Shown here: in pieces, positions 18,165 through 60,856 of the stretch
Numbering within the stretch: the stretch's first letter is position 1
How the letters are laid out: every line of letters begins with the position of its first letter
IMG/VR virus record: IMGVR_UViG_3300020477_001008
Span: 124,001-188,000 of that record
DNA length: 64,000 bases
Direction: 5' to 3' (one strand)
Program-made: the position numbers and the translations under genes
The notes under the pieces: generated by a model
Told to the model about the DNA's origin: nothing
Seen by the model: only the letters and a program-made list of their open reading frames with translations
Databases searched by the model: none

Positions 18165-18341
18165 GTAGTGAATCGTGTTGGGGAATCAGTGTGAAATTCG
18201 CTGGCTCTACCAGGAACCGTAAAGTCGGAGTGCCAACCACTACAAGTCCGCTGTCGAATGAGGGCCTGGGAAAGTCTAGTTCTACAATGAAAAGTTAACA
18301 GTGGCGAGGCACGGCAACGTGTCATAAGGAAACTGTTAATG
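18165..18341 (+). ncRNA. cobalamin riboswitch (5' UTR) with RBS-sequestering expression platform
   Basis: Closing helix GTAGTG/CACTAC, GGGAA, T-loop GTGAAATTC, ACCGT, TGCCA; possible kissing pair CCAGG/CCTGG; TTAACAGT...ACTGTTAA stem encloses SD AAGGA and reaches the ATG; precedes a BtuB-like gene. Confidence 0.8.
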
Positions 18342-18848
18342 AATAAAACAACTGAAACGTTAGTATTATTTCTCTACTATATAGGTATTATAGCCTTGAG
18401 TAGAATAATACCACATCCACCAAACTTTACACCGGTTATTGCTATGGCAATTTTTATGCCATATATGACTCGCGATGTATATTTGGCTATGTTAGTTCCA
18501 ATTACGGCAATGTTTGTTTCAGATCTTTATTTGGGTTTGCACTCATTTATGATTTGGATTTATGGAACTATAATGTTATGTACACTTGTTAGTAGATATT
18601 TTAATTTAATAACAATGTCTATATTTGCACCAGTTATATTTTTTACAACAACTAATTTTGGTGTATGGTTAACAAGCACATTATATCCAAAAACACTAGA
18701 CGGTTTAATCTTATGTTACACGATGGCGATACCTTTTTTTAGAAACACATTATTGAGTACGATATTTTATATATTATTACTTGGAGCAATATATGAAATA
18801 GCAAAAAGGAGTTATACGTGGTTAAAAAAATATTACTATCTGCAATAA
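18339..18848 (+). CDS. DUF6580-like / ECF S-component-like membrane transporter (putative cobalamin)
   Basis: SRIIPHPPNFTPV.A.A.F motif, SDL.LG, NFGVW, Y..AIPFF.NT; multiple TM helices. Confidence 0.75.
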   Translation: MNKTTETLVLFLYYIGIIALSRIIPHPPNFTPVIAMAIFMPYMTRDVYLAMLVPITAMFVSDLYLGLHSFMIWIYGTIMLCTLVSRYFNLITMSIFAPVIFFTTTNFGVWLTSTLYPKTLDGLILCYTMAIPFFRNTLLSTIFYILLLGAIYEIAKRSYTWLKKYYYLQ

Positions 18849-20686
18849 TACTATTATGTTGGTGGCTTGTTATGACAAAGGTACAAGCTAATGAAACAGA
18901 ACAATTTAAATCAGAATCTTTTTATGAAGAAGATGGTGCGTTAGTTGTTGATATAACAATTTATTTGATTAGAGATCCAAGCACACTTACAACAAAATCA
19001 ATGAGTGTTGATTATGTAGACAAATACACAATTGAAAATACAAATAGTGTTGATACAATACAAGCAATACAAAGAGTAACAGGTTTAACAATAGTACAAT
19101 CAGGTCCAACAGGACAACAAACATCAATCTTTATGAGAGGAACAAATTCTAATCATACAATGGTTGCTATAAATGGAATACCAATTAAAGATAATTCAAC
19201 AACAGGCGGACTACACGATTTAGGACAAGACTTTATTAAACATATTACTGGAATACAAGTAGTAAAAGGTTCACAAGGAACACTATTTGGTCCAAATGCA
19301 GTTGGTGGTGTAATTAATTTTATTACAACAGACAGTTATGAAAATTCAATATCAACAACAATAGGATCAAACAATACTAAAGGTGTAACAGTAAAAATAC
19401 ACGAAGATATTGATAATCACTCAATAAGTTTAATTTTAGATGGTACAAAATCAGATGGTATATCAGTATATCCAAATGGTGCTGAAAAAGATGGATATGA
19501 TACTAAAAATATTACAGTAAACACAAATAGTAAATTTGAAAACTTTGATATAGGAACTACTATTATTAAAAGAAATAATAATTCAGATTTAGATGCATCA
19601 GGTTCTGATGATACAGATTACACATCAAATAACAAAATGAGTGTATATCAAATTTATACAAAAATAAAAAATGCACTAGGATTTAGTAATTTTACTTTTT
19701 CTAGAAGTGAATATGATAGAGAATATGTAAATGGTACAGAAATTGATGAATATGATTCAAATACGAACACTTATCTTTTTACAAATACTTTTATGTTTAA
19801 TGATTTTGATATAACGCCTGGTATTGAGTATGAACAATATGATGGTACGTTTAACAATAGAGGTTCATATACATCATCAGTTGATAAAGAAGGAGATAAC
19901 ACAGGAACATTTATTAATGGAAATTATCTAGTAAATGATAAACTTCTTTTTTCAATAGGTTTAAGAAATGATAACTCTAGTATGTTTAACAACTATAACA
20001 CTTATAGACTAGGTACTACATATGAACTAACTGATGACTTAACATTAAAAAGCAATTATTCAACAGCAGTAAAAACACCTACACTATACGAACTATATGG
20101 TGCAGACAGTTATGGTTATAATGGTAATCCTGACTTACAACCAGAAGAAGCAGAAACAATAGATATAGGTTTTGAATATCAAATAAATGATAAAATGGAT
20201 ATGGACCTTGTTTACTTTACTACTGACTTAGATAATATGATCACGTATGGTAATAGTACATATTCAAATGCAACAGGTACATCTAACAGACACGGTGCTG
20301 AATTAAAAATGAATAGTGCTATAGATGAAAACTTTTATGTAAGGTCAGGTACAACGTTTACTATTGCACAAGACAGTGATGATAAACAAGTTACTAGAAG
20401 ACCAAAATGGAATTGGTTTACAGGTATTGATTACAAGAAAGACAAAGTTACAAACACACTTGAATGGATTTATACTGGAAAGCATTTAGACATAGATTCA
20501 CAAACTTATGCTACTATTGAAAAACCAGCAGTTGATATAATTAATTTTCATTCAAAGTATGAGCTTAATGAAAGTTCAGAATTAATACTTTCTGTAAACA
20601 ATCTTACAGATGTAGATTATGAAAGACCAGATGGCTATTCGCAAGATGGTAGAAACTTCTTACTAACATTTAAAATTAAATACTAA
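18818..20686 (+). CDS. btuB: TonB-dependent outer-membrane receptor, BtuB-like (vitamin B12)
   Basis: Signal peptide; plug motif SIFMRGTNSNHTMVAINGIPI, GSQGTLFGPNAVGGVINFIT, NPDLQPEE; C-terminal NNLTD.DYE...GY...GR.F....K.KY; downstream of Cbl riboswitch. Confidence 0.85.
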   Translation: MVKKILLSAIILLCWWLVMTKVQANETEQFKSESFYEEDGALVVDITIYLIRDPSTLTTKSMSVDYVDKYTIENTNSVDTIQAIQRVTGLTIVQSGPTGQQTSIFMRGTNSNHTMVAINGIPIKDNSTTGGLHDLGQDFIKHITGIQVVKGSQGTLFGPNAVGGVINFITTDSYENSISTTIGSNNTKGVTVKIHEDIDNHSISLILDGTKSDGISVYPNGAEKDGYDTKNITVNTNSKFENFDIGTTIIKRNNNSDLDASGSDDTDYTSNNKMSVYQIYTKIKNALGFSNFTFSRSEYDREYVNGTEIDEYDSNTNTYLFTNTFMFNDFDITPGIEYEQYDGTFNNRGSYTSSVDKEGDNTGTFINGNYLVNDKLLFSIGLRNDNSSMFNNYNTYRLGTTYELTDDLTLKSNYSTAVKTPTLYELYGADSYGYNGNPDLQPEEAETIDIGFEYQINDKMDMDLVYFTTDLDNMITYGNSTYSNATGTSNRHGAELKMNSAIDENFYVRSGTTFTIAQDSDDKQVTRRPKWNWFTGIDYKKDKVTNTLEWIYTGKHLDIDSQTYATIEKPAVDIINFHSKYELNESSELILSVNNLTDVDYERPDGYSQDGRNFLLTFKIKY

Positions 20687-24115: not shown

Positions 24116-24588
24116 TGTCAGCTAAATGGTACGGACAAGTTTCAAACAATCTTGGTAAGATTCCTGAATGTATCGAATATTACGAAAATCAATTAGAAGA
24201 AGCAAGACTAGAGTGTGGACTTACTGGTAACATTGAAAGAAATGCTAAAAATGTTCCTGGTATAGTTGAACATCGATTTAATCAATTACAAGAAATAGAA
24301 GCAATTTTAGAGTTTCTTAATATCCAACTAAGAAAAATCAGAAGTAAACATTATAAGAAGTTTTTAGAAAATTATCAAAGAGCATTAACATCAAATGATG
24401 TTAGAAACTATATTGACGGAGAAGATGACGTTGTTGATATGGCTAATTTAGTTAATGAATTTGCTTTGTTAAGAAATAAATTCTTAGGTTTACTTAAAGC
24501 CATTGATGCCAAACAATTTCAAATTAATAATATTGTAAAATTAAGGGTAGCTGGGCTAGATGATGCAGAATTATTTGCAAAAAAATAG
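24115..24588 (+). CDS. uvsY: recombination mediator UvsY-like
   Basis: Position between uvsX and uvsW; ...RALTSNDVRNYIDGEDDV...LLRNKFLG..KAID.KQFQI.NIVKLR.AG. Confidence 0.75.
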   Translation: MSAKWYGQVSNNLGKIPECIEYYENQLEEARLECGLTGNIERNAKNVPGIVEHRFNQLQEIEAILEFLNIQLRKIRSKHYKKFLENYQRALTSNDVRNYIDGEDDVVDMANLVNEFALLRNKFLGLLKAIDAKQFQINNIVKLRVAGLDDAELFAKK

Positions 24589-24603
24589 TCTCAGTTGTAT
24601 AAT
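24575..24603 (+). promoter_or_regulatory. sigma70 promoter; uvsW ATG 5 nt after the -10
   Basis: TTGCAA(24575-80)-N17-TATAAT(24598-603)-N5-ATG(24609). Confidence 0.65.
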
Positions 24604-24608
24604 AAGAA

Positions 24609-26060
24609 ATGAAAACAACAGTACTGCATATTAAAGACGAAGTAAATGTTAAGTTTGAAAACTTAGATGTAGTAACTCGTAGAAAAATTTCCGACAAGTT
24701 AAAATTTTTTGTACCATATGCATATCATTTACCAGCATATAAGCTAGGAAGATGGGATGGTAATATACGTTTCTGTGATATAGGTGGAAGAACATATTTA
24801 AATTTAATTGATAGAATACTGCCTGTTATTGAAGATCAAGATTATGATATTAAAATCAAAGATGATAGAAAAGATTATGATTTAAAATTTGAAGCTATAG
24901 ATGAAGGATATTTGTCAGAAATTACTTGGCCTAAAACTCATCCAGAAGCTGGAGAACCAATTATATTAAGAGACTATCAAGTTAAAGTTATAAATGAATT
25001 TATAAAAGCACCACAAAGTTTACAAGAAATTGCCACAGGTGCAGGTAAAACAATTATTACTGCCGCATTATCAAAAATGTGTGAGAAGTATGGTAGAACT
25101 ATTGTTATAGTACCTAATAAAAGTTTAGTAGGACAAACAGAACAAGATTATATTACTTGCGGATTAGATGTTGGTGTATATTTTGGAGACAGAAAAGAAT
25201 TAGGTCATCAACATACAATTTGTACTTGGCAAAGTTTAAATGTATTGCACAAAAAAACTAAAAAAGCAGAAGCTCCTTTTCCTTTAGATGAGTTTATAAA
25301 AGATGTTGTATGTGTAATGGTAGATGAAGTTCATATGGCAAAAGCAGATGTATTAAAAACTTTATTAACAGGACCATTTGCACACGTTCCAATGAGATGG
25401 GGATTAACAGGAACAATACCAAAAGAAGATTATGAAAAAATAAGTTTAATAGCTTCACTAGGTAAAGTAATAAATCAATTATCAGCAAGTGAATTACAAG
25501 AAAAAGGTGTGTTAGCACAATGCCACGTTAATATTATTCAAACGCAAGACTTTCAAACTTTTAGATCTTACCCAGAAGAATTAACTTATCTTACAAGTTT
25601 TAAACCAAGACTTACATTTATGGGTAAGTTAGTTGATGAAATAAGATCAGGTGGTAATACATTAATATTAGTTGATAGAATTAAAACAGGAGAACTGTTA
25701 CAAGAAGAAATACCTGGATCAGTTTTTATACAAGGTAAAACAAAATTAGAAACACGTGAAGAAGAATATTCAGAAGTAGCTACAGAACAATATAAAGTTA
25801 TTATTGCAACATACGGAGTTGCGGCAGTAGGTATTAATTTACCAAGAATTTTTAATCTAGTACTTGTGGAACCAGGAAAAAGCTTTGTAAGAGTTATACA
25901 AAGTATAGGAAGAGGTATTAGAAAAGCAGAAGACAAAGATTATGTGCAAATTTGGGATATTACATCAAGTTGCAAATATTCAAAAAGACACTTAACGGCA
26001 AGAAAAAGGTTTTACAAAGAAGCCAAATACCCGTATACTGTTAGTAAGGTAAAAATATAA
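24609..26060 (+). CDS. uvsW: SF2 DNA helicase UvsW
   Basis: LRDYQ, ATGAGKT, DEVH, GLTGT, GINLP and QSIGRGIRK. Confidence 0.93.
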   Translation: MKTTVLHIKDEVNVKFENLDVVTRRKISDKLKFFVPYAYHLPAYKLGRWDGNIRFCDIGGRTYLNLIDRILPVIEDQDYDIKIKDDRKDYDLKFEAIDEGYLSEITWPKTHPEAGEPIILRDYQVKVINEFIKAPQSLQEIATGAGKTIITAALSKMCEKYGRTIVIVPNKSLVGQTEQDYITCGLDVGVYFGDRKELGHQHTICTWQSLNVLHKKTKKAEAPFPLDEFIKDVVCVMVDEVHMAKADVLKTLLTGPFAHVPMRWGLTGTIPKEDYEKISLIASLGKVINQLSASELQEKGVLAQCHVNIIQTQDFQTFRSYPEELTYLTSFKPRLTFMGKLVDEIRSGGNTLILVDRIKTGELLQEEIPGSVFIQGKTKLETREEEYSEVATEQYKVIIATYGVAAVGINLPRIFNLVLVEPGKSFVRVIQSIGRGIRKAEDKDYVQIWDITSSCKYSKRHLTARKRFYKEAKYPYTVSKVKI

Positions 26061-30781: not shown

Positions 30782-30810
30782 TTGACTTTTAGATAGCTTT
30801 CACGTATAAT
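30782..30810 (+). promoter_or_regulatory. sigma70 promoter of the primase gene
   Basis: TTGACT-N17-TATAAT(30805-10)-N7-ATG(30818). Confidence 0.75.
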
Positions 30811-30817
30811 AACATTA

Positions 30818-31816
30818 ATGAATTTACAATCTACAATTTTAGCATTTATTGGTGGTAAACATAAAAAAACACCATCAGGTTGGCACACTATTAATTGTCC
30901 AATGTGTGTAACTCAAGGGCATTCTGCAGACAAAAGAAGACGTGGTGGATTTAAATTCAGCGAAGTTTCAAGCTATCATTGTTTTAATTGTGGATATAAA
31001 GCATCATATACAGCCGGAAGATTAATAGGACGTAAAATGCGTGACTTATTAATTAATATTGGAGTACCAGAAGCAACAGTAAAAGAATTACAATTACTTG
31101 CAATGAAAGAAAAAGACGATAATGTAATTGTTAATAAACAAACCCACTATGCAAATGATTTTGAAGAAAAACAATTACCAAAAAATTCAGTATTATTAAG
31201 TGAAATTATTAAAGGTGCAAATCCACCTGCTAGTGCTTTATTTGTTTACAAATATTTAATGGATAGAGGTTTAGATTTTTATGATAAGTTTTATTGGAGT
31301 TCAGATCCATATATGAAAATTAATGAAAGAGTTATTATACCATTTTATGCTAATGGAAAATTAGTAGGATATACAGCTAGAATTATAAGAAATTATGATA
31401 ATGTACCAAAATATTATTCAGTAGTACAACCTGGATACATTTATAATTTTGATCACTTGTATAAAGATAGAAAATATATTATAATAACAGAAGGTGTGTT
31501 AGATGCACTTGCAATAGATTCAGTAAGTTCTTTAGGAAATAAGCTTACACAAGGACAAATAGATTTAATTAATAGCATTGGCAAAACTGTCATTGTTTGT
31601 CCAGACAGAGATAAGTCTGGAGGAAATTTAATTGATGTTGCTGTTGAAAACAACTGGCTAGTAAGTTTTCCACAATGGGAAAACAATATTAAAGATTGTG
31701 CAGAAGCAGTAAATAATTATGGGAGATTATATACAGTACAGTCTGTAATAAATGGTGCTATAGGTAATATAGCAAAAATTAAAGTTTTGAAAAGAATAGG
31801 AGCCACTAATGGTTAA
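30818..31816 (+). CDS. DNA primase (gp61/DnaG-like)
   Basis: Zn ribbon CPMC...HCFNCG, RVIIPF, TOPRIM ITEGVLDA and PDRD. Confidence 0.92.
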   Translation: MNLQSTILAFIGGKHKKTPSGWHTINCPMCVTQGHSADKRRRGGFKFSEVSSYHCFNCGYKASYTAGRLIGRKMRDLLINIGVPEATVKELQLLAMKEKDDNVIVNKQTHYANDFEEKQLPKNSVLLSEIIKGANPPASALFVYKYLMDRGLDFYDKFYWSSDPYMKINERVIIPFYANGKLVGYTARIIRNYDNVPKYYSVVQPGYIYNFDHLYKDRKYIIITEGVLDALAIDSVSSLGNKLTQGQIDLINSIGKTVIVCPDRDKSGGNLIDVAVENNWLVSFPQWENNIKDCAEAVNNYGRLYTVQSVINGAIGNIAKIKVLKRIGATNG

Positions 31817-32417
31817 AGAAAGTAAGAAAGATAAAGATAAAAACGCACAACCAAAGCAACCACAACAACCAATGCAACCAGGTATGTTAATGTGGGAAGC
31901 TGGAATAATGTATTTCAGTGATGGTTTTGATAGCCAAACAACGAAGCCAGTAATTCAAGCAATTATTGAAAAGAATTTAATGCCAGATTCACAAAGGCCA
32001 AAAGAATTAACGTTGGTGGTTAATTCACCAGGTGGACAAGTACATTCAGCATTTGCATTAATAGACACAATGAAAGGATCAGCAATTCCTGTAAAGACAG
32101 TAGGACTTGGTATGATAGCAAGTTGTGGATTGCTAACTTTTATGAGTGGTCATAAAGGACGTAGGGTTATTACACCAAACACGTCTATATTATCACACCA
32201 ATACAGTTGGGGATCTGGTGGTAAAGAACACGAACTATTTGCAAGAGTAAGAGAGTTTGAATTGAGTACAGCAAGAATGTTAGAACATTATAAAAAATGT
32301 ACAGGTTTAAGCGAAAAGAAAGTTAGAGATATTTTATTACCACCTGAAGACAGATGGTTAAGTGCCAAAGAAGCAGTCAAGTATGGTATTGCAGATAAAA
32401 TTGTATCAACATATTAG
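31809..32417 (+). CDS. clpP: ATP-dependent Clp protease proteolytic subunit ClpP-like
   Basis: VNSPGG, catalytic Ser (IASCG), His (LSHQ), Asp (EDRWLSAKEA.KYGIAD). Confidence 0.9.
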   Translation: MVKESKKDKDKNAQPKQPQQPMQPGMLMWEAGIMYFSDGFDSQTTKPVIQAIIEKNLMPDSQRPKELTLVVNSPGGQVHSAFALIDTMKGSAIPVKTVGLGMIASCGLLTFMSGHKGRRVITPNTSILSHQYSWGSGGKEHELFARVREFELSTARMLEHYKKCTGLSEKKVRDILLPPEDRWLSAKEAVKYGIADKIVSTY

Positions 32418-32426
32418 GAGAATAAA

Positions 32427-33077
32427 TTGAAAGTCACATTAGTTGACAAAATGGGAACAGACTTAACGGTAGTAAATGCCGCTAGAGTAAGTTATGCAAA
32501 AACTAAAGAGAAGTTTGACGATAAAGATAAAAAGTTAATTAGCTATCTTGCAAAACACAATCATTGGTCACCATTTGCACACGCAAGTTTACAATTTAGA
32601 ATTAAGGCTCCTATTTTTGTAGCAAGGCAATTGGTTAAGCATCAAGTTGGTTTAAGTTGGAATGAAGTTAGCAGACGTTATGTTAATTATACACCTGAGT
32701 TATATGATATAGAAACTTGGAGAGGTAAGCCAGAAAATTCAAAACAAGGTTCTGGAGGTGAAATAAAACTTAATAGAAGATTAGCAAACGCAGTAGCAAT
32801 GGCTATGAAAAAATGTACAGTTGCTTATGTTGAATTAATTGAAAAAGGAGTTGCACCAGAAATGGCAAGAGCTGTTTTACCACAAAGTATGATGACTGAA
32901 TGGTATTGGAGTGGAAGTTTATATGCATTTGCTAGAGTATGTAATTTAAGATGTGCAAAAGATACACAGTTAGAAACACAAGAAGTGGCTAATAAAATTG
33001 ATAAAATTTGCAATAAAGAGTTCCCACATAGTTGGAAATACTTGCGAAACTTAGATGAAGAGGTTATAATAAAATAA
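32427..33077 (+). CDS. thyX: flavin-dependent thymidylate synthase
   Basis: VVNAARVSY, HWSPFAH, ARQLVKHQ..SWNEVSRRY, EMARAVLP; TTG start after AGGAG. Confidence 0.95.
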   Translation: MKVTLVDKMGTDLTVVNAARVSYAKTKEKFDDKDKKLISYLAKHNHWSPFAHASLQFRIKAPIFVARQLVKHQVGLSWNEVSRRYVNYTPELYDIETWRGKPENSKQGSGGEIKLNRRLANAVAMAMKKCTVAYVELIEKGVAPEMARAVLPQSMMTEWYWSGSLYAFARVCNLRCAKDTQLETQEVANKIDKICNKEFPHSWKYLRNLDEEVIIK

Positions 33078-47293: not shown

Positions 47294-48229
47294 ATGTCAA
47301 CAAGAAATATATGGGGTATAGGACAAGATACATTAAACTTTCCATCTGATACTATTCCAGTATCAAGTATGATGAGTGATACACAAAAGAATTTAATTAA
47401 TAGTGGATTACTTGATCAAGTTGATTTTACGGATCCTTGGGGAAGAAAATCTAAAGCATATCCTGGTTTTCAAAATCCGCATAATGATACTTTAACACAA
47501 ATTGCTAATGGCTGGAATTCAAGATTATCAGTTATGCCAGATGGTTGGAATGATAGCAACTATGCCAATAGAGCAGTTGTTGATGGAAATGCATTAGGTA
47601 ATGGTTTCAGTGCTAGAAAGTTAACTGATACAGAAATTAAAGATATTGGTTTTGTTGAAGGTATATTAAAAGACTTTACATTTTTAACTAATAGACAATC
47701 TGGTATGGACATTATGGAATATGCAAATCCTAATAGTATGTGGTCAGCATTAGGAAATACAGGTACCTATGGTGCTATGGTTGGTTTACCTACCACAGCA
47801 AGTTTTCCAACTGGTATTGTAGTTCCAGGTGTAACAAATTATCTTGGTGTTGCTAGAACTATAAATGAAATTGGACAAATTTTAAATAATGTACCAACAG
47901 GTTATACTTCTGGTCCTTGTAAATGGATAGAAGATATAATGAAAGCTGTAATGAAAGGTGGTTCAATATTAGCAGATATATTGAATAAAGTACTTGACGT
48001 ATTAGGCATCATTGGATTAGTAAACTCAATACTTGGTATGATTAAAATGTTAATGGATATGATACTTGAAGATCTAAGAACATTAGGATCAGCTATTGAA
48101 AGAATGAAGCAGGCGGCTTTATCTGGATTGTTAGAAGCATTAATGAAAGACCCTTGTATGAGATACTTAATTACGGCAGGGTTGGCAGTAGCTGGTACAG
48201 TAGCAATATTAAAAACAACCTCTCTATAA
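47294..48229 (+). CDS. hypothetical protein downstream of PAAR, hydrophobic helical C-terminus
   Basis: 311 aa, SD AGGAGG; long amphipathic/hydrophobic C-terminal helices. Confidence 0.75.
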   Translation: MSTRNIWGIGQDTLNFPSDTIPVSSMMSDTQKNLINSGLLDQVDFTDPWGRKSKAYPGFQNPHNDTLTQIANGWNSRLSVMPDGWNDSNYANRAVVDGNALGNGFSARKLTDTEIKDIGFVEGILKDFTFLTNRQSGMDIMEYANPNSMWSALGNTGTYGAMVGLPTTASFPTGIVVPGVTNYLGVARTINEIGQILNNVPTGYTSGPCKWIEDIMKAVMKGGSILADILNKVLDVLGIIGLVNSILGMIKMLMDMILEDLRTLGSAIERMKQAALSGLLEALMKDPCMRYLITAGLAVAGTVAILKTTSL

Positions 48230-48269
48230 TTTTTTCTTGTTTTTTCTAAAAATTCGTGTATAATTAACA

Positions 48270-48514
48270 GACAACGTTGAAGTTATCGTAATAGATTATA
48301 TGGACGTGGGGGCAGTACCCACCACCTCCACCATTAAGTTAAAAAGTTTTATGGGGGTGAACTAGGATCGACAGTAATTCAAAGGGTAATGGAGTTGTCC
48401 GGATGGAAGCTCGGTTAACGCGACAAACTTATAAATGCAGATGAAAATCTAGCACTTGCGGCCTAATTCGTTAGGCTAACGGGGTCCGGGGCACCTGGCA
48501 ACAGAACGCCCCAC
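48270..48514 (+). ncRNA. ssrA: circularly permuted (two-piece) tmRNA, alphaproteobacterial type
   Basis: Acceptor piece with T-arm GTGGG-GGCAGTA-CCCAC and CACCTCCA-CCA (ends 48333); 19-nt intervening segment; coding piece starts GGGGGTG at 48353 (G3:U70 pair) with GGATCGAC; tag gca gat gaa aat cta gca ctt gcg gcc taa = ADENLALAA (48437-48466); GGCAACAGAA; 5' end approximate. Confidence 0.93.
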
Positions 48515-48521
48515 TTGTATT

Positions 48522-54360: not shown

Positions 54361-56058
54361 ATGTTATTAACTTTGCTAACATTATTGTCAGCATTATCTA
54401 TAAGTGCGGTAGCGATCTTCTATTCTATAGCAGGTCTGGCCGCGATATTTGCCGGTGCGGCTGTTCCTATTATGATAATGGGTACTGTTTTAGAAGTAGG
54501 TAAATTAGTTACCGCTTCTTGGCTATATCAGAATTGGAAGAAGTCACCATTCTTTTTAAAGTTCTATCTCACGATCGCAGTAGTAGTTTTAATGTTTATA
54601 ACGTCTATGGGTATCTTTGGTTTCTTATCTAAAGCACACGTAGAACAAACAGCACCGTCGACACTTATTACACAAAAGATAGAACAGATAGATGAAAGAC
54701 TAGTTCGTGAAAATGCTAAAGTAGAAAGATTTACATTAGATTTAGAAAGATTAAACACAGGTACTAACGTAAGAATAGATACATTAGTAGATACAGAACA
54801 AGGCAAATTAGATTCAATTTATTCACGTATTGATAAAGAGATTGCTGATATTACAGCAATTGCTAATACAAGTATTAATACGCAAAAAGAAAGAATAACT
54901 CAAGCTAAAGAAAGAGCTGATAGAGATATTGCACAATTAAATGAAGCTAGAGCAAAAACTTGGGGTAAGAAAAGAATTGATGATGAAATAGCAAAGATTA
55001 GAGATAATGAATTAGCTGTGGCGGCCGCGGCACAAAAAGAAATAATAAAAATACAAGAAAAATTAAATGTTGATATACAAGCTATTAAAGACAAATATCA
55101 AGCTAGTATTGATGCTATTACAACCAATGTAACAAAGTTAACAGGCGAAGCTGAAGCTACAACAGGTGAAATAGAAGTCAAAGCAGATGAACTTGAAGGA
55201 AAACTTACAGTTGTATATGCTAATATTGATGATTTAAATGAAGAAAAATTTGTACTACAATCACAAATTAAAGAGATAGAAGTTGAAGTAGGACCAATAA
55301 AATACATAGCAGAATTTGTATATGGTATGGAAGCAGATGCTGATCTATTAGAAAAATCAGTTAGATGGGTTATTATTATAATTATATTTGTATTTGATCC
55401 ACTTGCAGTATTATTATTGATTGCGGCAAACTTCTCTTTAAAAAGAAGATTTGGTAGTGATATGGAAGAAATGGTTGAAGCCAAATTTGGTGGCGGAAAA
55501 TTAGATGACTATTGGAAAGATAGATATCAAGATATGAAAGAAGATCTTTCAAGATTTAATAAACAAAAAGAACACCAAGATACTACACAAGAAGAACATT
55601 CAGTTAGTGCCTCATATAATTTAGGTGAAGTTAATGTTGATAATACTGATCAATCAGTTGAAGATTATTTAGATGAAGTACAATATGATATAGATCCTAA
55701 AGAATTTGAAGGTGTAGAAGAAAACGATTTAGGTCATCCAAATTATGATTTAATTAAAGATGAAGAAACAGGTAAAAAGAAATATTGGGAAGACCAAAAT
55801 AAAGAAGAACAGCTAGAAAGATTTAAACAGCGAGAAGAAGAAGAAAAACAAGCACTAGAAGAATATTCACGTAAAGCTAGGGAAGAAGATGGCTTTGATC
55901 CAGATGAAGTTGAAGGATATGAAGAATTTAATAAAAATTACGAGAATAAAGAAGATGACGAATCAGTTAGTATTGCTGAAGATGAAGTAACGCCAACTAT
56001 AATTGAAGATGTTAAGATTACAGATCTATCCGATGAGGATGTTAAAAAAAAGACTTAA
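54361..56058 (+). CDS. membrane protein with long periplasmic coiled coil and acidic tail
   Basis: N-terminal TMs (SIAGLAAIFAG..., GIFGFLSKAH), coiled coil, VGPIKY, IIFVFDPLAVLLLIAAN; ends just after A_AAA_AAG. Confidence 0.8.
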   Translation: MLLTLLTLLSALSISAVAIFYSIAGLAAIFAGAAVPIMIMGTVLEVGKLVTASWLYQNWKKSPFFLKFYLTIAVVVLMFITSMGIFGFLSKAHVEQTAPSTLITQKIEQIDERLVRENAKVERFTLDLERLNTGTNVRIDTLVDTEQGKLDSIYSRIDKEIADITAIANTSINTQKERITQAKERADRDIAQLNEARAKTWGKKRIDDEIAKIRDNELAVAAAAQKEIIKIQEKLNVDIQAIKDKYQASIDAITTNVTKLTGEAEATTGEIEVKADELEGKLTVVYANIDDLNEEKFVLQSQIKEIEVEVGPIKYIAEFVYGMEADADLLEKSVRWVIIIIIFVFDPLAVLLLIAANFSLKRRFGSDMEEMVEAKFGGGKLDDYWKDRYQDMKEDLSRFNKQKEHQDTTQEEHSVSASYNLGEVNVDNTDQSVEDYLDEVQYDIDPKEFEGVEENDLGHPNYDLIKDEETGKKKYWEDQNKEEQLERFKQREEEEKQALEEYSRKAREEDGFDPDEVEGYEEFNKNYENKEDDESVSIAEDEVTPTIIEDVKITDLSDEDVKKKT

Positions 56059-56264
56059 AAACCAGGAAAGAGAGAATAAAAAAAATTGACATCAACGATG
56101 AAATTAGTGTACAATTAAAAGAAGTAAAAAAAACTATTGATATGGAAGGCATTAATCAAAGAACTCAAAAAACACTGGCACTCAATCACGGAGCAAAAGG
56201 TGAGACAGTAATATCCAAGGCTGACAAAGAATGGTTAGATCAGAAATCAGATAATAATAAATGA
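56046..56264 (+). other. -1 frame extension of the 54361 gene (72 open codons) or small ORF 56142..56264
   Basis: Frame open from 56046 to TGA 56262-64, overlapping the clpX ATG. Confidence 0.45.
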
Positions 56265-57553
56265 GCGATAAAGAGATTAAAATGAAATGCTCGTTCTGTG
56301 AAAAGACTAGAGCCGAATCACATAAATTAATAGCAGGACCTAAAGAAACATTTATTTGCGATGAATGTGTAAAACTTTGCCACGATATTTTAAAAGAAGG
56401 AACAATTGAAAACGAAACAAAAGAGTTTGCTATTCCTGATCCAAAAAAATTACACGGATATTTAAATGAACACGTAATTGGTCAAGATAGAGCAAAGAAA
56501 ATTGTTAGTGTAGCAGTTTATAACCATTATAAAAGAATTGTTAATAATTTAATTAAAGAAGATGGGCAAGACGAAATTGAAAAATCTAATGTTATGATGT
56601 TAGGACCATCAGGTGTTGGAAAAACACTTTTAGCTAAAAAGGTTGCTGAATACGTAAATGTACCATTTGCTATTGCTGATGCAACAACAATAACAGAATC
56701 AGGTTATGTAGGTGATGACGTAGAGAATATTGTAACAAGATTATTGCAACAAGCAGACTTTAATGTTGAAAAAGCTGAACGTGGAATTATATACATTGAT
56801 GAAATAGATAAAAAAGCAAAAAAAGGTGAGAACGTATCAATTACTAGAGATGTATCTGGTGAAGGTGTACAACAAGCTTTATTAAAAATTATTGAAGGAA
56901 CAACTGTTAGAGTTCCGCCACAAGGTGGAAGAAAACATCCTGGTGCAGAAATGATTGAAGTTGATACATCAAATATATTGTTTATAGTTGGTGGAGCATT
57001 TGTTGGTATAGATAAAGTTATTAATAAAAGGGCTAATAAGTCAGCAGGTATTGGATTTAATCAACGAGTAGAAACTGTTGATACAGGATTTGATGAATGC
57101 GAACCAGATGATTTAATTAAGTATGGATTAATACCTGAACTTGTTGGAAGGTTACCAGTTATAGTAGGTTGTCATAATTTAGATAAAAAAGATTTAAAAG
57201 CAATTATGCTTGATGTAAAAAATTCATTGATTAAACAATCTCAACGTTTATTTAAAATGGAAAATGTAAATTTAATTATAACTGAAGATGCAGTAGATTA
57301 TGTAGTAGATGAAGCACACGAAAAGAAATTAGGTGCTAGAGGATTAAAATCTGTGTTAGAAAAAGGTTTATTAGAAATACAATATGACTTACCAGAATAC
57401 AGAGATGGTGGAGTTAGTGAAATTACAGTTACAGAAAAAACGCTCAAAGGAGAAAAACCGATGCTCACTTATGAGTTTGATGCTAAAGATATAAAAGCTA
57501 AAGAAACAAAAAAAGGGAAAAAGGAAGATAACGGTACAACAGGAAAAGAATGA
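56261..57553 (+). CDS. clpX: ATP-dependent Clp protease ATP-binding subunit ClpX
   Basis: Zn domain CSFC...ICDEC; Walker A GPSGVGKT; pore loop GYVG; IDEIDK; RDVSGEGVQ; RKH loop; IGF loop (AGIGF). Confidence 0.97.
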
Positions 57554-58104
57554 AACAAAGATATAGTAATTACGAGTATCAAAAAAAGAAAGCATTAATT
57601 AACGAGAATATTAGAAGTAAAGAAGTTCGTTTAATATTAGAATCATCACAAGAAATAGTAACTACACAAGAAGCATTAAGATTATCTAGAGAGCAAGATT
57701 TAGATCTAGTTTGTGTTAGCACAAAATCAAATCCACCTATATGTAAAATTATGGATTATGGGAAACATCTATATGAACAAAAAAAGAAACAAAAAATTGC
57801 TGATAAAAAACAAAGAGAAGCTATTGTGGATACAAAAGAAATCCAGTTTAGACCAGCAACTGGAATTGGAGATCTTAAAGTAAAAGCTAAAAAGGTACAA
57901 GAGTTTATAGATGATGGAGATAAGGTAAAATTAGTAATGAAATTGCGTGGCAGGGAAAATGCTATGAAGGATTTTGCTATGGAACAATTCAAAAAATTTG
58001 TTGATTTAATTGAGAATTATGACTACGATTATAGGCCAAATATACAGGGAAATAAAATACTTGCAATTTTAAAGAAAGGTGTTATAATAAAGAACAATGA
58101 GTGA
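57550..58104 (+). CDS. infC: translation initiation factor IF3
   Basis: INENIR..EVRLI, DLDLV.VS....[28 protein letters not shown]....RGRE. Confidence 0.95.
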
Positions 58105-58453
58105 TAAACCAAGGAAAAAATACGACATCAAAAATTTCTCTAATTTTGGGAAATTTGAGCAAAAGCGAGATCGAAGACCAAGACGTGAGCCAGATCCACC
58201 TGGTTTAGCAGTTACAGTTCACGGCGACGATGTAATGAAAGCTTATAGAAGGCTTAAAAAGAAACTAATGAAAGATAACCTTATGGATACAATAAGGGAT
58301 AAAAGATATTACAAAAAGCCAAGTGAAATTAGACAAGAAAAATTAAAAGTGCAAAGAAGGAATATGCAAAAAGCTCAAAGAGATAGAGCTATGCAATATG
58401 GTATAAGATATAAAAACTATGATCCTAGCACAGCCAAAACACGTGGCTATTAA
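58097..58453 (+). CDS. rpsU: 30S ribosomal protein bS21 with N- and C-terminal extensions
   Basis: VTVHGDDVMKAYRRLKKKL...RYYKKPSE.R core; own promoter TTGCAA-N16-TGn-TATAAT-N8-ATG. Confidence 0.85.
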   Translation: MSDKPRKKYDIKNFSNFGKFEQKRDRRPRREPDPPGLAVTVHGDDVMKAYRRLKKKLMKDNLMDTIRDKRYYKKPSEIRQEKLKVQRRNMQKAQRDRAMQYGIRYKNYDPSTAKTRGY

Positions 58454-58779
58454 TGTTCGACCAAATAAAGTTTCATCAGCACCCCACAGAGAATAAAGGC
58501 AAACAAGCTATAATAGATTTTGTAGATTACAAAATGAGTATAGTATGCTCACCTACATCTTATGGTGGAGATAAAGGTTTGTTTGAAATTGCAGTATTTG
58601 ATAAAGCTGGAGAGTTTGTTGATTTAAAAGGTATTAGTGATAAAGATGATCAAGTACACGGTTGGTTAAGAGAAGATGAAGTTGTATTAGTAATAGAAAA
58701 ATTGTGTGAAATAACAGATATGGATGTTAGATTAGTTTTATTGCGTTCAGCATTTAGGGAGAACAAAAATGATAGATGA
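58453..58779 (+). CDS. hypothetical phage protein
   Basis: SYGG..GLFEIAV...V.GWL pattern. Confidence 0.7.
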   Translation: MFDQIKFHQHPTENKGKQAIIDFVDYKMSIVCSPTSYGGDKGLFEIAVFDKAGEFVDLKGISDKDDQVHGWLREDEVVLVIEKLCEITDMDVRLVLLRSAFRENKNDR

Positions 58780-58921
58780 ACTTGTAGAACAAATAGCTAG
58801 AATGAACAAAGACGAAAGAAATGAATTTGTTGAAACTCTAGTTAAAAAATGGCCTGATTTATCAGAGTCAATTTATTTTTTATTAAATGTAAATTTAATG
58901 GAGAAGGAGAACATTAAATAG
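58769..58921 (+). CDS. small hypothetical protein (50 aa, not in the ORF track)
   Basis: SD AGGGAG; MIDELVEQIARMNKDERNEFVETLVKKWPDL... Confidence 0.55.
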   Translation: MIDELVEQIARMNKDERNEFVETLVKKWPDLSESIYFLLNVNLMEKENIK

Positions 58922-58934
58922 ATGTTTAATTCAA

Positions 58935-59010
58935 GGGCGGTTAGCTCAGTTGGTAGAGCATCTCGTTTACACCGAGGGGGTCAAAGGTTCGAGTCCTTTA
59001 CTGCCCACCA
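58935..59010 (+). tRNA. tRNA-Val(TAC)
   Basis: GGGCGGT...ACTGCCC-A-CCA; anticodon loop TTTACAC; TTCGAGT. Confidence 0.97.
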
Positions 59011-59014
59011 TTAC

Positions 59015-59090
59015 GGAGTATTAGTGTAGCGGTTAACACGTCGCCCTGTCACGGCGAAGACCACGGGTTCGAATCCCGTATACTCCGCCA
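59015..59090 (+). tRNA. tRNA-Asp(GTC)
   Basis: GGAGTAT...ATACTCC-G-CCA; anticodon arm TCGCC-CTGTCAC-GGCGA. Confidence 0.97.
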
Positions 59091-60319: not shown

Positions 60320-60367
60320 TTGACTTCCTGATAAGTATTTTATATAATACTGATGTACAATTAAATA
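60320..60367 (+). promoter_or_regulatory. tandem sigma70 and late promoters for rplL-sufB
   Basis: TTGACT(60320-25)-N17-TATAAT(60343-48); TAAATA 60362-67; SD AAGGA. Confidence 0.7.
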
Positions 60368-60385
60368 TAATTAATAAGGAAAACT

Positions 60386-60856
60386 ATGTCAGAAGATGAA
60401 GTAAAAAAAGCTGAAGAAACAAAGGCAGAAGAAAAGCCAGTAGAACCAAAAGCTGAAGAAACATCTAAAACTATTACAAGAAATTTAGATGCTATTGTTG
60501 AAGAACTTGGACAATTAACAGTTATGGAAGCGGCCGATCTTGCTAAAAAATTAGCTAAAGCTTGGGATATTGATTTAGATAATATGGCGGCCGGTGTTGC
60601 ACCAGCAGGTGGTGGCGCCGCGGGAGCTCCAGCAGACGCAGATGCTCCTGTAACAGTTATATTAAAAGATTTTAAAGAAGGTACTAAAATTAATGTCTTA
60701 AAAGCAATTAAGGCAATTAAAGGTTTAGGACTAATGGAATCTAAACAATTTGTAGAAGCATTACCTAAAGAAGTTGATTCAGAAATACCAAGAGATAAAG
60801 CAGAAGAAATTAAAAAACAATTGGAAGAAGTTGGCGGTAACGTTGAAATAAAATAA
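60386..60856 (+). CDS. rplL: 50S ribosomal protein bL12 (L7/L12) with N-terminal extension
   Basis: [16 protein letters not shown], Ala/Gly hinge, [34 protein letters not shown]. Confidence 0.95.

What the first reader, a model, noticed from the sequence alone, without database searches (positions are those of the whole stretch)
57550..58453. clpX-infC-rpsU coupling; bS21 has long extensions and its own promoter
Seen: IF3 overlaps the end of clpX, and bS21 overlaps the end of IF3. The bS21 is 118 aa, with ~35 extra basic N-terminal residues ([36 protein letters not shown]) and a C-terminal tail, versus the ~60-70 aa typical of cellular bS21. A promoter inside the 3' end of infC could express it separately. 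Inference: the extensions may contact the anti-SD/mRNA exit region and change initiation preference.
Basis: partly seen in the sequence, partly recalled or inferred. Interest (0 to 1): 0.65.

Follow-up and report, generated by a model that had tools for sequence, protein, structure and literature searches.

The report
Huge-phage bS21 with conserved extensions
A marine huge phage carries a tightly overlapping clpX-infC-rpsU gene string whose ribosomal protein bS21 has conserved extra tails and its own conserved promoter; that promoter sits so close to the start codon that the mRNA should be leaderless, but phage bS21 proteins with such tails, and the idea that they redirect ribosomes, are already published.

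Summary
The window is part of a 242.6-kb viral contig, estimated 55% complete, with a tail sheath and a large terminase. Its permuted tmRNA is of the alphaproteobacterial type.

- **Gene string:** clpX, infC and rpsU overlap by 4 and 8 nt. They belong to a six-gene overlapping string that is conserved in 14 or more distinct marine relatives.
- **Start and extensions:** the 118-aa bS21 start is the only usable one. The 36-aa N-extension has dN/dS 0.11, the same as the core (0.12). No counterpart was found in 401 alphaproteobacterial genomes.
- **Fold:** AlphaFold models both tails without stable structure.
- **Promoter:** taken alone it is no better than chance. However, it lies in the strongest synonymous-site cold spot of infC (p about 0.003), and both hexamers are invariant.
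- **Leaderless class:** the same promoter type sits 5-8 nt before the ATG of seven other genes. These include primase-like, DnaB-like and UvsW-like genes. The DnaB-like case is conserved in 13 diverged relatives.
- **Not tested:** the transcript 5' end and any effect on initiation.
- **Prior work:** Al-Shayeb et al. 2020 already reported N-extended phage bS21 and proposed the same function.

Verdict: a new member of a known kind, with a modest new detail in the leaderless internal promoter.

The parts
56086..56115 (+). Upstream sigma-70-type promoter P1 (TTGACA, 18-nt spacer, TACAAT), 26 nt before the first small ORF of the string
   Evidence: 11 of 12 matches. Both hexamers are conserved in relatives L003, L006, L009 and L011 while the spacer varies.
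56142..56264 (+). 40-aa ORF overlapping the clpX start by 4 nt; function unknown
   Evidence: An ORF of 38-42 aa is called at the same place in relatives. No Pfam or PHROG match.
56261..57553 (+). clpX: zinc-finger N-domain plus AAA+ unfoldase
   Evidence: NF003745 551 bits, PF06689 and PF07724. Three ClpP-family genes lie in the same contig.
57550..58104 (+). infC (IF3, 184 aa). It has an ATG start with AGGA 5 nt upstream and overlaps the clpX stop (ATGA).
   Evidence: TIGR00168 152 bits, IF3_N 17-82 and IF3_C 93-175. The start context was read. phrog_9787 gives E = 2.7e-54.
58061..58088 (+). Internal promoter P2 inside the last 15 codons of infC: -35 TTGCAA (58061-58066), 16-nt spacer, extended -10 TGT-TATAAT (58080-58088). 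The -10 ends 8 nt before the rpsU ATG.
   Evidence: Both hexamers are invariant in 19 distinct sequences, and the variation falls in the spacer. Only 2 of 13 third-codon positions vary here, against 129 of 184 gene-wide; permutation p = 0.0033.
58097..58204 (+). rpsU codons 1-36: N-terminal extension, basic and aromatic (12 K/R, 4 F/Y, 7 P/G)
   Evidence: This is the only start codon in the open frame before residue 47. It is conserved in the family. dN/dS is 0.112. pLDDT is 50-57. No counterpart in the cellular bS21 searched.
58205..58402 (+). rpsU codons 37-102: canonical bS21 core
   Evidence: PF01165 covers residues 39-88 and TIGR00030 covers 39-92. Helices at 46-59, 62-70 and 75-101. Matches solved bS21 and bS21m chains.
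58403..58453 (+). rpsU codons 103-118 plus stop: C-terminal tail with a conserved IRYKNYDP motif, ending R-G-Y in this copy
   Evidence: dN/dS 0.161; pLDDT 50-57. Plain phage and alphaproteobacterial bS21 end near residue 102.
58453..58779 (+). 108-aa ORF coupled to rpsU through a TAATG overlap; function unknown, always next to rpsU in the family
   Evidence: No Pfam or PHROG match. The Atlas returns only viral hypothetical-protein clusters.
58769..58921 (+). 50-aa ORF, last protein gene of the overlapping string
58935..59090 (+). tRNA-Val(TAC) and tRNA-Asp(GTC), directly downstream
60320..60856 (+). Conserved promoter (TTGACT, 17-nt spacer, TATAAT) with an SD-bearing leader, followed by rplL (bL12, 156 aa, with a Glu/Lys-rich N-extension of about 32 aa)

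Best explanation
This is a translation and proteostasis module of a marine huge myophage, probably of an alphaproteobacterial host.

**Expression.**
- A conserved host-type promoter (P1) drives an overlapping, probably translationally coupled string: 40-aa ORF, clpX, infC, rpsU, 108-aa ORF, 50-aa ORF, then two tRNAs.
- A second conserved sigma-70-type promoter (P2) is embedded in the last codons of infC.
- P2 ends 8 nt before the rpsU ATG. It should therefore give a leaderless or near-leaderless rpsU transcript that needs no Shine-Dalgarno pairing.
- rpsU then belongs to the same promoter class as the phage's primase-like, DnaB-like and UvsW-like replication genes, which suggests early or middle expression.

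**Protein.**
- The product is a genuine bS21 core. It carries a selected 36-aa basic and aromatic N-tail and a 16-aa aromatic C-tail, both likely disordered until bound.

**Inferred, not shown.**
- The protein replaces the loosely bound host bS21 on 30S subunits, next to the 16S 3' end.
- The tails add rRNA or mRNA contacts that help it compete for the site and bias initiation toward phage mRNAs.
- The phage IF3 has an ATG start. It therefore lacks the non-canonical start codon that, by textbook knowledge, underlies IF3 autoregulation in cells, and it would raise IF3 activity in parallel.
For: - **Gene identities and overlaps:**
- **Phage nature and size:**. Alpha-type permuted tmRNA.
- **Closest isolates:** jumbo phages of Pseudomonas, Sinorhizobium and Agrobacterium. 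Atu_ph07 has clpX-infC adjacent, with an 83-aa bS21 about 1.3 kb further along the same strand.
- **Synteny:** conserved in relatives.
- **N-extension is real and selected:** no other start codon; family conservation; dN/dS 0.112 against 0.123 for the core.
- **No cellular counterpart:** 374 of 401 alphaproteobacterial genomes match only residues of about 36-103. The top-scoring hits that were translated are 66-82 aa once upstream non-coding residues are set aside.
- **P2 promoter:** a synonymous-site cold spot with invariant hexamers and a variable spacer. Permutation p = 0.0033.
- **Leaderless class, counts:** TATAAT ends 5-8 nt before the first ATG of 9 of 293 ORFs, against about 0.5 per position. 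Seven of these have a TTG at 15-18 nt. The full pattern occurs 27 times against 14.5 +/- 3.7 simulated.
- **Leaderless class, conservation:** the DnaB-like case is conserved across 13 diverged relatives.
- **Leaderless class, gene functions:**
- **RNA:** exact-match metatranscriptome contigs cover rpsU and both gene junctions.
- **Literature:** phage bS21 enters ribosomes (PMC6375957). bS21 supports the anti-SD, and its C-terminus lies by the SD helix (PMC7550191; PMC10491246).
Against: - No 5' end could be mapped, because only assembled contigs were available.
- One RNA contig (57983-58122) runs straight through P2. Read-through from upstream therefore exists, or DNA is present in the library.
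- The promoter consensus match alone is not above chance.
- The 8-nt gap between the -10 and the ATG is at the long end for a start exactly on the A, so a 1-3-nt leader is as likely as a true leaderless 5' end.
- No ribosome binding, structure or initiation effect was tested for this protein.
- AlphaFold says nothing useful about the tails (pLDDT 50-57).
- The host is inferred only from the tmRNA type and the hosts of related isolates.
- The pelagiphage bS21 tested by Mizuno et al. made E. coli ribosomes almost inactive. That result fits inhibition as well as it fits redirection.
Confidence: 0.6

Rival explanations
1. There is no internal promoter. rpsU is made only from the long polycistronic mRNA, by termination-reinitiation at the 8-nt overlap. 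The conserved block upstream reflects requirements of translational coupling (an unstructured A/U-rich ribosome landing zone) or constraints on the IF3 C-terminus.
For: - All six genes overlap by 1-11 nt.
- An RNA contig spans 57983-58122 without mismatch.
- Promoter-like matches in the region are not above chance.
- The block is coding sequence.
Against: - The constraint reaches from about -43 to -4, further than a ribosome footprint.
- The invariant positions are exactly the two hexamers, while the spacer and the SD-like AAGG vary.
- The same -35/-10/ATG geometry is conserved at the DnaB-like gene even where the upstream sequence is unrelated.
- The geometry recurs at eight genes in the genome.
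Confidence: 0.2
2. The protein is a bS21-derived inhibitor or decoy rather than a working ribosomal subunit. It either occupies the bS21 site and shuts down host SD-led translation, or it acts off the ribosome as an RNA-binding protein through its basic tails.
For: - Ribosomes carrying pelagiphage bS21 had about 5% activity in an E. coli system (PMC6375957).
- The tails are basic, aromatic and predicted disordered.
- The phage has leaderless genes that would escape a block of SD-dependent initiation.
Against: - About 17% of the phage's own genes carry GGAG upstream, against 2.5% background, and 30% carry AGGA. A general block of SD-led initiation would therefore hurt the phage too.
- The core is under the same purifying selection as the tails and keeps the bS21 profile above the curated cut-offs.
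- The low activity in E. coli may be simple incompatibility, as those authors note.
Confidence: 0.17
3. The extension is an annotation artefact and translation starts downstream.
For: Cellular bS21 proteins are about 66-82 aa.
Against: - The only in-frame ATG, GTG or TTG after 58097 is Met47, which lies inside the bS21 domain.
- The frame opens only 2 codons before the ATG.
- Codons 2-36 have dN/dS 0.11, and indels there are in frame.
Confidence: 0.02

Closest known systems
N-terminally extended S21 of huge phages (Al-Shayeb et al. 2020, Nature, PMC7162821)
   Same: Both are phage-encoded bS21 in a genome over 200 kb that also carries IF3, bL12, tRNAs and tmRNA. [quoted passage not shown]
   Different: - This lineage is marine, and its tmRNA points to an alphaproteobacterial host.
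- The extension is 36 aa with its own conserved motifs, and there is an added 16-aa C-tail.
- The gene sits in an overlapping clpX-infC-rpsU string and has a conserved promoter abutting the ATG. That paper describes none of these, as far as I read it.
bS21 of pelagiphage HTVC008M and other aquatic phages (Mizuno et al. 2019, PMC6375957); bS21 phages of Chen et al. 2022 (PMC9723584)
   Same: These are viral bS21 under purifying selection, mostly in aquatic lytic phages. The HTVC008M protein was shown to enter E. coli ribosomes.
   Different: - HTVC008M bS21 is 67 aa with no extensions.
- The bS21 phages of Chen et al. place the gene among late structural genes of Bacteroidota phages.
- Here the promoter class is shared with replication genes.
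Agrobacterium phage Atu_ph07 (490 kb) and Sinorhizobium phage Phosso (469 kb)
   Same: - They are among the closest cultured relatives by large terminase (about 53%).
- Atu_ph07 has clpX directly followed by an annotated IF3, with a bS21 homologue about 1.3 kb further along the same strand.
- Both phages infect Alphaproteobacteria.
   Different: - Their bS21 proteins are 83 and 88 aa, with an N-extension of only about 13 aa and no C-tail.
- rpsU is not fused into the clpX-infC string in either phage.
- The Atu_ph07 copy is annotated only as a hypothetical protein.
Leaderless phage and bacterial mRNAs (lambda cI from pRM; leaderless genes in Caulobacter, Deinococcus and mycobacteria)
   Same: The -10 hexamer sits 5-8 nt before the ATG with no room for a Shine-Dalgarno sequence. 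In E. coli, ribosomes lacking uS2 and bS21 handle lambda cI leaderless mRNA more easily (PMC10491246).
   Different: The 5' ends are only predicted here. Here the leaderless gene itself encodes bS21 and lies directly after an IF3 gene.
Organellar bS21 with extensions (mitochondrial bS21m, plastid bS21c) in solved ribosomes
   Same: The best solved-structure matches to the family profile are mammalian bS21m (E about 1e-12). The alignment runs into the C-tail motif. Plastid and plant mitochondrial bS21 chains also carry long N-extensions (chain lengths 100-190).
   Different: The tail similarity is only a few residues and may be chance. The alphaproteobacterial bS21 proteins translated here lack this tail. 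No structural comparison of the tails was possible.

Membership tests
Ribosomal protein bS21 (PF01165 / TIGR00030) | Profile match above the curated cut-off | tested here: met
   PF01165 scores 42.3 bits against a cut-off of 27. TIGR00030 scores 44.7 bits against 28.95. The match covers residues 39-92. phrog_21469 also matches.
Ribosomal protein bS21 (PF01165 / TIGR00030) | Small helical fold like solved bS21 chains | tested here: met
   AlphaFold gives helices at 46-59, 62-70 and 75-101 with pLDDT 77-91. A family profile matches 40 solved bS21, bS21m and bS21c sequences.
Ribosomal protein bS21 (PF01165 / TIGR00030) | Incorporation into the 30S subunit next to the 16S 3' end | not testable with these tools
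   This has been shown only for another phage's bS21 in E. coli (PMC6375957).
N-extended huge-phage S21 (Al-Shayeb 2020) | Encoded by a phage genome larger than 200 kb | tested here: met
   The viral record is 242,646 bp and estimated 55% complete. It has a tail sheath and a large terminase.
N-extended huge-phage S21 (Al-Shayeb 2020) | [quoted passage not shown] | tested here: met
   The 36 residues before the core hold 12 K/R and 4 F/Y. They are conserved with dN/dS 0.11.
Translation initiation factor IF3 | IF3_N and IF3_C domains, equivalog score | tested here: met
   TIGR00168 scores 152 bits against a cut-off of 60. PF05198 and PF00707 are both above their cut-offs.
Translation initiation factor IF3 | Non-canonical start codon (AUU type) that underlies autoregulation of cellular infC (textbook knowledge) | tested here: not met
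   The frame opens at 57532, and the only start is ATG at 57550, with AGGA 5 nt upstream. This concerns regulation, not protein family membership.
ClpX | C4 zinc finger plus AAA+ module, equivalog score; a ClpP partner available | tested here: met
   NF003745 scores 551 bits against a cut-off of 359, and PF06689 matches. Three ClpP-family genes lie in the contig.
Sigma-70-type promoter | -35 and -10 hexamers at 16-18 nt, here with an extended -10 TG | tested here: met
   TTGCAA, 16-nt spacer, TGT-TATAAT: 10 of 12 matches plus the TG.
Sigma-70-type promoter | Consensus match more frequent than chance in this A+T-rich region | tested here: not met
   11 sites were found against 15.2 +/- 4.1 in shuffles.
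Sigma-70-type promoter | Conservation beyond what the overlapping coding sequence requires | tested here: met
   Only 2 of 13 third-codon positions vary, against 129 of 184 in infC. This is the lowest window in the gene, with permutation p = 0.0033. Both hexamers are invariant.
Sigma-70-type promoter | Mapped transcription start | not testable with these tools
   Only assembled contigs of RNA runs were available.
Leaderless mRNA | -10 element within about 5-8 nt of the start codon and no Shine-Dalgarno sequence | tested here: met
   The gap is 8 nt. The nearest AAGG is 17 nt upstream and is lost in L011. Eight genes show this geometry, and it is conserved at the DnaB-like gene.
Leaderless mRNA | 5' end of the RNA at the start codon | not testable with these tools
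   No raw reads or 5'-end data were available.
bS21 C-terminal RLY/KLY head-contact motif (Watson et al. 2020) | Terminal basic-aliphatic-Tyr motif | tested here: inconclusive
   This copy ends R-G-Y. Family members end RGY, RG, RGR or KH. Watson et al. describe the motif for Gamma- and Betaproteobacteria and some phages.

The most novel reading that the evidence does not exclude
The phage runs two classes of mRNA, SD-led and leaderless. The leaderless class includes its own bS21 and its primase-like, DnaB-like and UvsW-like replication genes. Under this reading the adjacent IF3 and the tailed bS21 form a switch that retunes host ribosomes between the two initiation modes during infection. IF3 is known to disfavour leaderless initiation, and bS21 supports the anti-SD. 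If so, the bS21 gene would be expressed by the very mode of initiation that its product regulates.
Probability: 0.15. Interest if true: 0.75.

Novelty: new member of a known kind. Interest (0 to 1): 0.4.

Why it matters
Phage-encoded ribosomal proteins are common in aquatic viruses, but their function is still untested. This lineage offers a clean case:

- a bS21 whose tails are as strongly selected as its core;
- physical linkage to IF3 and ClpX;
- a conserved promoter that predicts a leaderless transcript.

This gives concrete, cheap experiments: promoter-reporter fusions, 5'-end mapping, ribosome pull-downs with and without the tails, and toeprinting on leaderless against SD-led mRNAs. It also points to cultured relatives (Atu_ph07, Phosso) in genetically tractable Alphaproteobacteria where the clpX-infC-rpsU module can be studied.

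It does not change the current picture. The central hypothesis is already in print.

Tried and rejected
- **tblastn of the bS21 against the phage collection.** Both the whole protein and residues 30-118 found nothing, even at E = 5. The low-complexity filter probably masks this lysine/arginine-rich query. I treat this as uninformative, not as absence. A profile search did find bS21 in Atu_ph07 and Phosso.
- **Single-protein scan of viral contigs.** It found no relatives. The alignment-based scan did.
- **Genome-collection scan with the bS21 alignment.** It found nothing.
- **Genome-collection scan with ClpX.** It gave about 50-55% identity to many phyla and does not identify a host.
- **RNA evidence.** Only assembled contigs were available, so transcript starts, strand and level could not be read. 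The high depth bins at 56832-56935 and 58912-59015 come from other organisms' conserved ClpX motif and tRNAs, as shown by many mismatches and loose ends. They are not phage expression.
- **Terminator-like hairpin at 58432-58448.** It is weak (5 pairs, no T run) and is expected by chance (1 found against 0.9 expected). Rejected.
- **SD-like AAAGG upstream of rpsU.** It lies 17 nt from the ATG and is lost in L011. Rejected as a ribosome-binding site.
- **The 108-aa ORF coupled to rpsU.** It stayed unexplained.
- **Searches and steps not run.** No complex prediction was run, because I do not claim a specific protein-protein contact. No genetic code other than table 11 was used.
Full report
**What the window is.**
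- The window is bases 124001-188000 of a 242,646-bp IMG/VR viral record, estimated 55% complete.
- It has 32% G+C and almost all genes lie on one strand.
- It encodes a tail sheath, a large terminase and replication genes.
- It also carries a permuted tmRNA of the alphaproteobacterial type (RF01849, 153 bits) and three tRNAs.
- By large terminase, the nearest cultured phages are jumbo phages of Pseudomonas (PA5oct group, 54%) and of Sinorhizobium (Phosso, 53%).
- I read it as a marine huge myophage with a probable alphaproteobacterial host. The host is an inference from the tmRNA type and the hosts of related isolates.

**The observation.**
- clpX (56261-57553), infC (57550-58104) and rpsU (58097-58453) are all well above curated family cut-offs.
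- They overlap by 4 and 8 nt.
A 40-aa ORF overlaps clpX by 4 nt. rpsU overlaps a 108-aa ORF by 1 nt. That ORF overlaps a 50-aa ORF by 11 nt. tRNA-Val and tRNA-Asp follow.
- The same order and overlaps occur in many metagenomic relatives with 74-92% bS21 identity.
- Short overlaps are common across this genome, so coupling as such is ordinary for a phage.

**The start and the extensions are real.**
- The rpsU frame opens two codons before the ATG at 58097.
- It has no other ATG, GTG or TTG until Met47, which lies inside the bS21 domain (residues 39-92).
- Across 14 distinct coding sequences, pooled dN/dS is 0.112 for codons 2-36, 0.123 for the core and 0.161 for the C-tail. Synonymous divergence is about 0.5 in all three parts.
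- Indels in the extension are in frame.
- The extension has 12 K/R and 4 F/Y in 36 residues.

**Comparison with other bS21.**
- In 401 alphaproteobacterial genomes, 374 had a match. The matches covered only residues of about 36-103, at 40% identity or less.
- The best cellular hits translate to proteins of about 66-82 aa without either tail.
- Other marine phage bS21 proteins are plain (about 68 aa) or carry shorter or different basic N-extensions of 22-38 aa.
- Atu_ph07 and Phosso have 83- and 88-aa versions with an extension of about 13 aa.
- Atu_ph07 has clpX directly followed by IF3, with its bS21 homologue about 1.3 kb further along the same strand.
- A more distant marine relative (L042) has clpX directly overlapped by a 101-aa extended bS21, with no infC between them.
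- The clpX link is therefore older than, or independent of, infC.

**Structure.**
- AlphaFold with a 22-sequence alignment gives a confident helical core (helices 46-59, 62-70 and 75-101).
- Both tails come out as low-confidence coil, with pLDDT 50-57.
- A family profile matches 40 solved bS21-type sequences. Mammalian mitochondrial bS21m is best, at about 1e-12, and the alignment runs a few residues into the C-tail motif.
- I treat that tail similarity as a lead only.

**The promoter.**
- The site at 58061-58088 reads TTGCAA, a 16-nt spacer, then TGT-TATAAT. It is one of 11 promoter-like matches in a region where shuffles give 15.2, so the match alone proves nothing.
- Conservation supports it. 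In 19 distinct sequences, 129 of 184 infC third-codon positions vary. In the 13 codons at 58054-58092 only 2 vary. This is the lowest window in the gene (the next lowest has 5), with permutation p = 0.0033.
- The two hexamers are invariant. The variable positions fall in the spacer, including the SD-like AAGG, which is lost in L011.
- The -10 hexamer lies in a short IF3 tail beyond the end of the Pfam IF3_C domain.

**A leaderless class.**
- The -10 ends 8 nt before the ATG, so a transcript from it would have a leader of about 0-3 nt and no room for a Shine-Dalgarno sequence.
- Genome-wide, TATAAT ends 5-8 nt before the first ATG of 9 of 293 ORFs, against about 0.5 per position elsewhere. Seven of these have a TTG at 15-18 nt.
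- The full pattern occurs 27 times, against 14.5 +/- 3.7 in Markov simulations.
- The long ORFs served this way include a UvsW-like helicase (24609), a Toprim primase-like gene (30818), a DnaB-like helicase (33077) and rpsU.
- At the DnaB-like gene, the pattern TTGCRA, 17 nt, TATART, 6 nt, ATG is kept in 13 distinct relatives whose flanks have diverged or been replaced.
- There too the promoter lies in the end of the upstream gene (thyX), which overlaps the ATG by 1 nt.
- Leadered promoters with good SD sequences also exist and are conserved, namely P1 before the string and one before rplL.
- SD-like motifs are moderately enriched overall: GGAG in 17% of upstream regions against 2.5% background.
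- No sigma-70 region-2 gene was found in the 242-kb fragment. The promoters are therefore presumably read by the host holoenzyme.

**RNA.**
- Six marine metatranscriptome runs from three studies hold parts of the stretch, but only as assembled contigs.
- Exact-match contigs cover 57504-57691 (the clpX/infC joint), 57983-58122 (the infC/rpsU joint, running through the promoter), 58171-58465 and 58299-58485.
- This fits transcription of the region and some read-through from upstream.
- It cannot show starts, strand or level, and DNA carry-over is not excluded.

**Mechanism.**
- *Shown:* the gene content, the overlaps, the selected tails, the conserved promoter-like element and its geometry.
- *Inferred from established knowledge:* bS21 is a late-binding, exchangeable 30S protein. 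It sits at the platform, supports the anti-SD, and has its C-terminal part beside the SD helix and the head (PMC7550191; PMC10491246). A phage bS21 can enter ribosomes (PMC6375957).
- *My reading:* the phage makes its own bS21 early, from a transcript that does not depend on SD pairing. The protein takes the host bS21 site, with the tails adding RNA contacts. The ATG-initiated IF3 adds initiation-factor activity without the usual start-codon feedback.
- ClpX, three ClpP homologues and a tmRNA whose tag ends in LAA form a neighbouring quality-control set.
- The direction of any effect on initiation is unknown.

**Novelty.**
- Phage bS21 is widespread in aquatic viruses (PMC6375957).
- Basic and aromatic N-terminal extensions on huge-phage S21, and the idea that they aid competitive binding or preferential initiation, were published in 2020 together with phage IF3 and bL12 (PMC7162821).
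- C-terminal motifs of phage S21 were discussed by Watson et al..
- Leaderless transcripts are discussed in transcript-mapping studies of the jumbo phages phiKZ and AR9, going by search hits only; I did not read those papers.
- What I did not find described:
  - the overlapping clpX-infC-rpsU string of this marine lineage;
  - the equal selective constraint on the tails and the core;
  - the conserved promoter abutting the rpsU start;
  - its shared class with replication genes.
- This is a new member of a known kind with a useful extra detail.

Noticed in passing
window 18165-20686: An AdoCbl-II (cobalamin) riboswitch (85 bits) sits directly upstream of a DUF6580 gene and a TonB-dependent receptor gene (Plug plus beta-barrel). 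This looks like a phage-borne, B12-regulated outer-membrane uptake cassette.
   Followed up: partly
window 48221-48515; 31809-32417; genome C1:196745-197284 and C1:73956-74465: The phage encodes a permuted alpha-type tmRNA whose tag ends in LAA. Alongside ClpX it has three ClpP-family genes. No SmpB and no IF1 were found in the 242-kb fragment.
   Followed up: partly
window 24575-24603, 30782-30810, 33042-33070 (genes at 24609, 30818, 33077): Sigma-70-type promoters end 5-7 nt before the ATG of UvsW-like helicase, Toprim primase-like and DnaB-like genes, which predicts leaderless mRNAs. The DnaB-like case is conserved in 13 relatives and lies inside the end of thyX.
   Followed up: partly
window 60386-60856: The phage bL12 is 156 aa, with a Glu/Lys-rich N-terminal extension of about 32 aa before the dimerisation domain. 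Relatives have 122, 149 or 154 aa, so this extension is variable. The gene sits between sufS and sufB and has its own conserved promoter.
   Followed up: partly
window 58453-58779: A 108-aa ORF is always coupled to the rpsU stop (TAATG, or a few nt away) in the family. It has no Pfam or PHROG match, and only viral hypothetical-protein clusters appear in the Atlas. It may belong functionally with bS21.
   Followed up: partly
L042:1025-2543: A distant marine relative has clpX overlapped by 32 nt by a 101-aa N-extended bS21, with no infC between them and no TATAAT before the ATG.
   Followed up: no
L136:2097-2348 (Agrobacterium phage Atu_ph07, AUZ95452.1): This gene is annotated as a hypothetical protein, but it matches the bS21 profile at 47 bits. 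It lies about 1.3 kb beyond clpX-infC on the same strand.
   Followed up: yes
window 58403-58426 (residues 103-110): The conserved C-tail motif IRYKNYDP aligns with MRKNRADP near the C-terminus of mammalian mitochondrial bS21m. The alphaproteobacterial bS21 proteins translated here lack it. This may be chance.
   Followed up: partly
window 54361-56058: A 565-aa protein with N-terminal membrane helices, a long coiled-coil-like middle and an acidic C-terminus is conserved just upstream of the string in all relatives. It has no family match above a cut-off.
   Followed up: no
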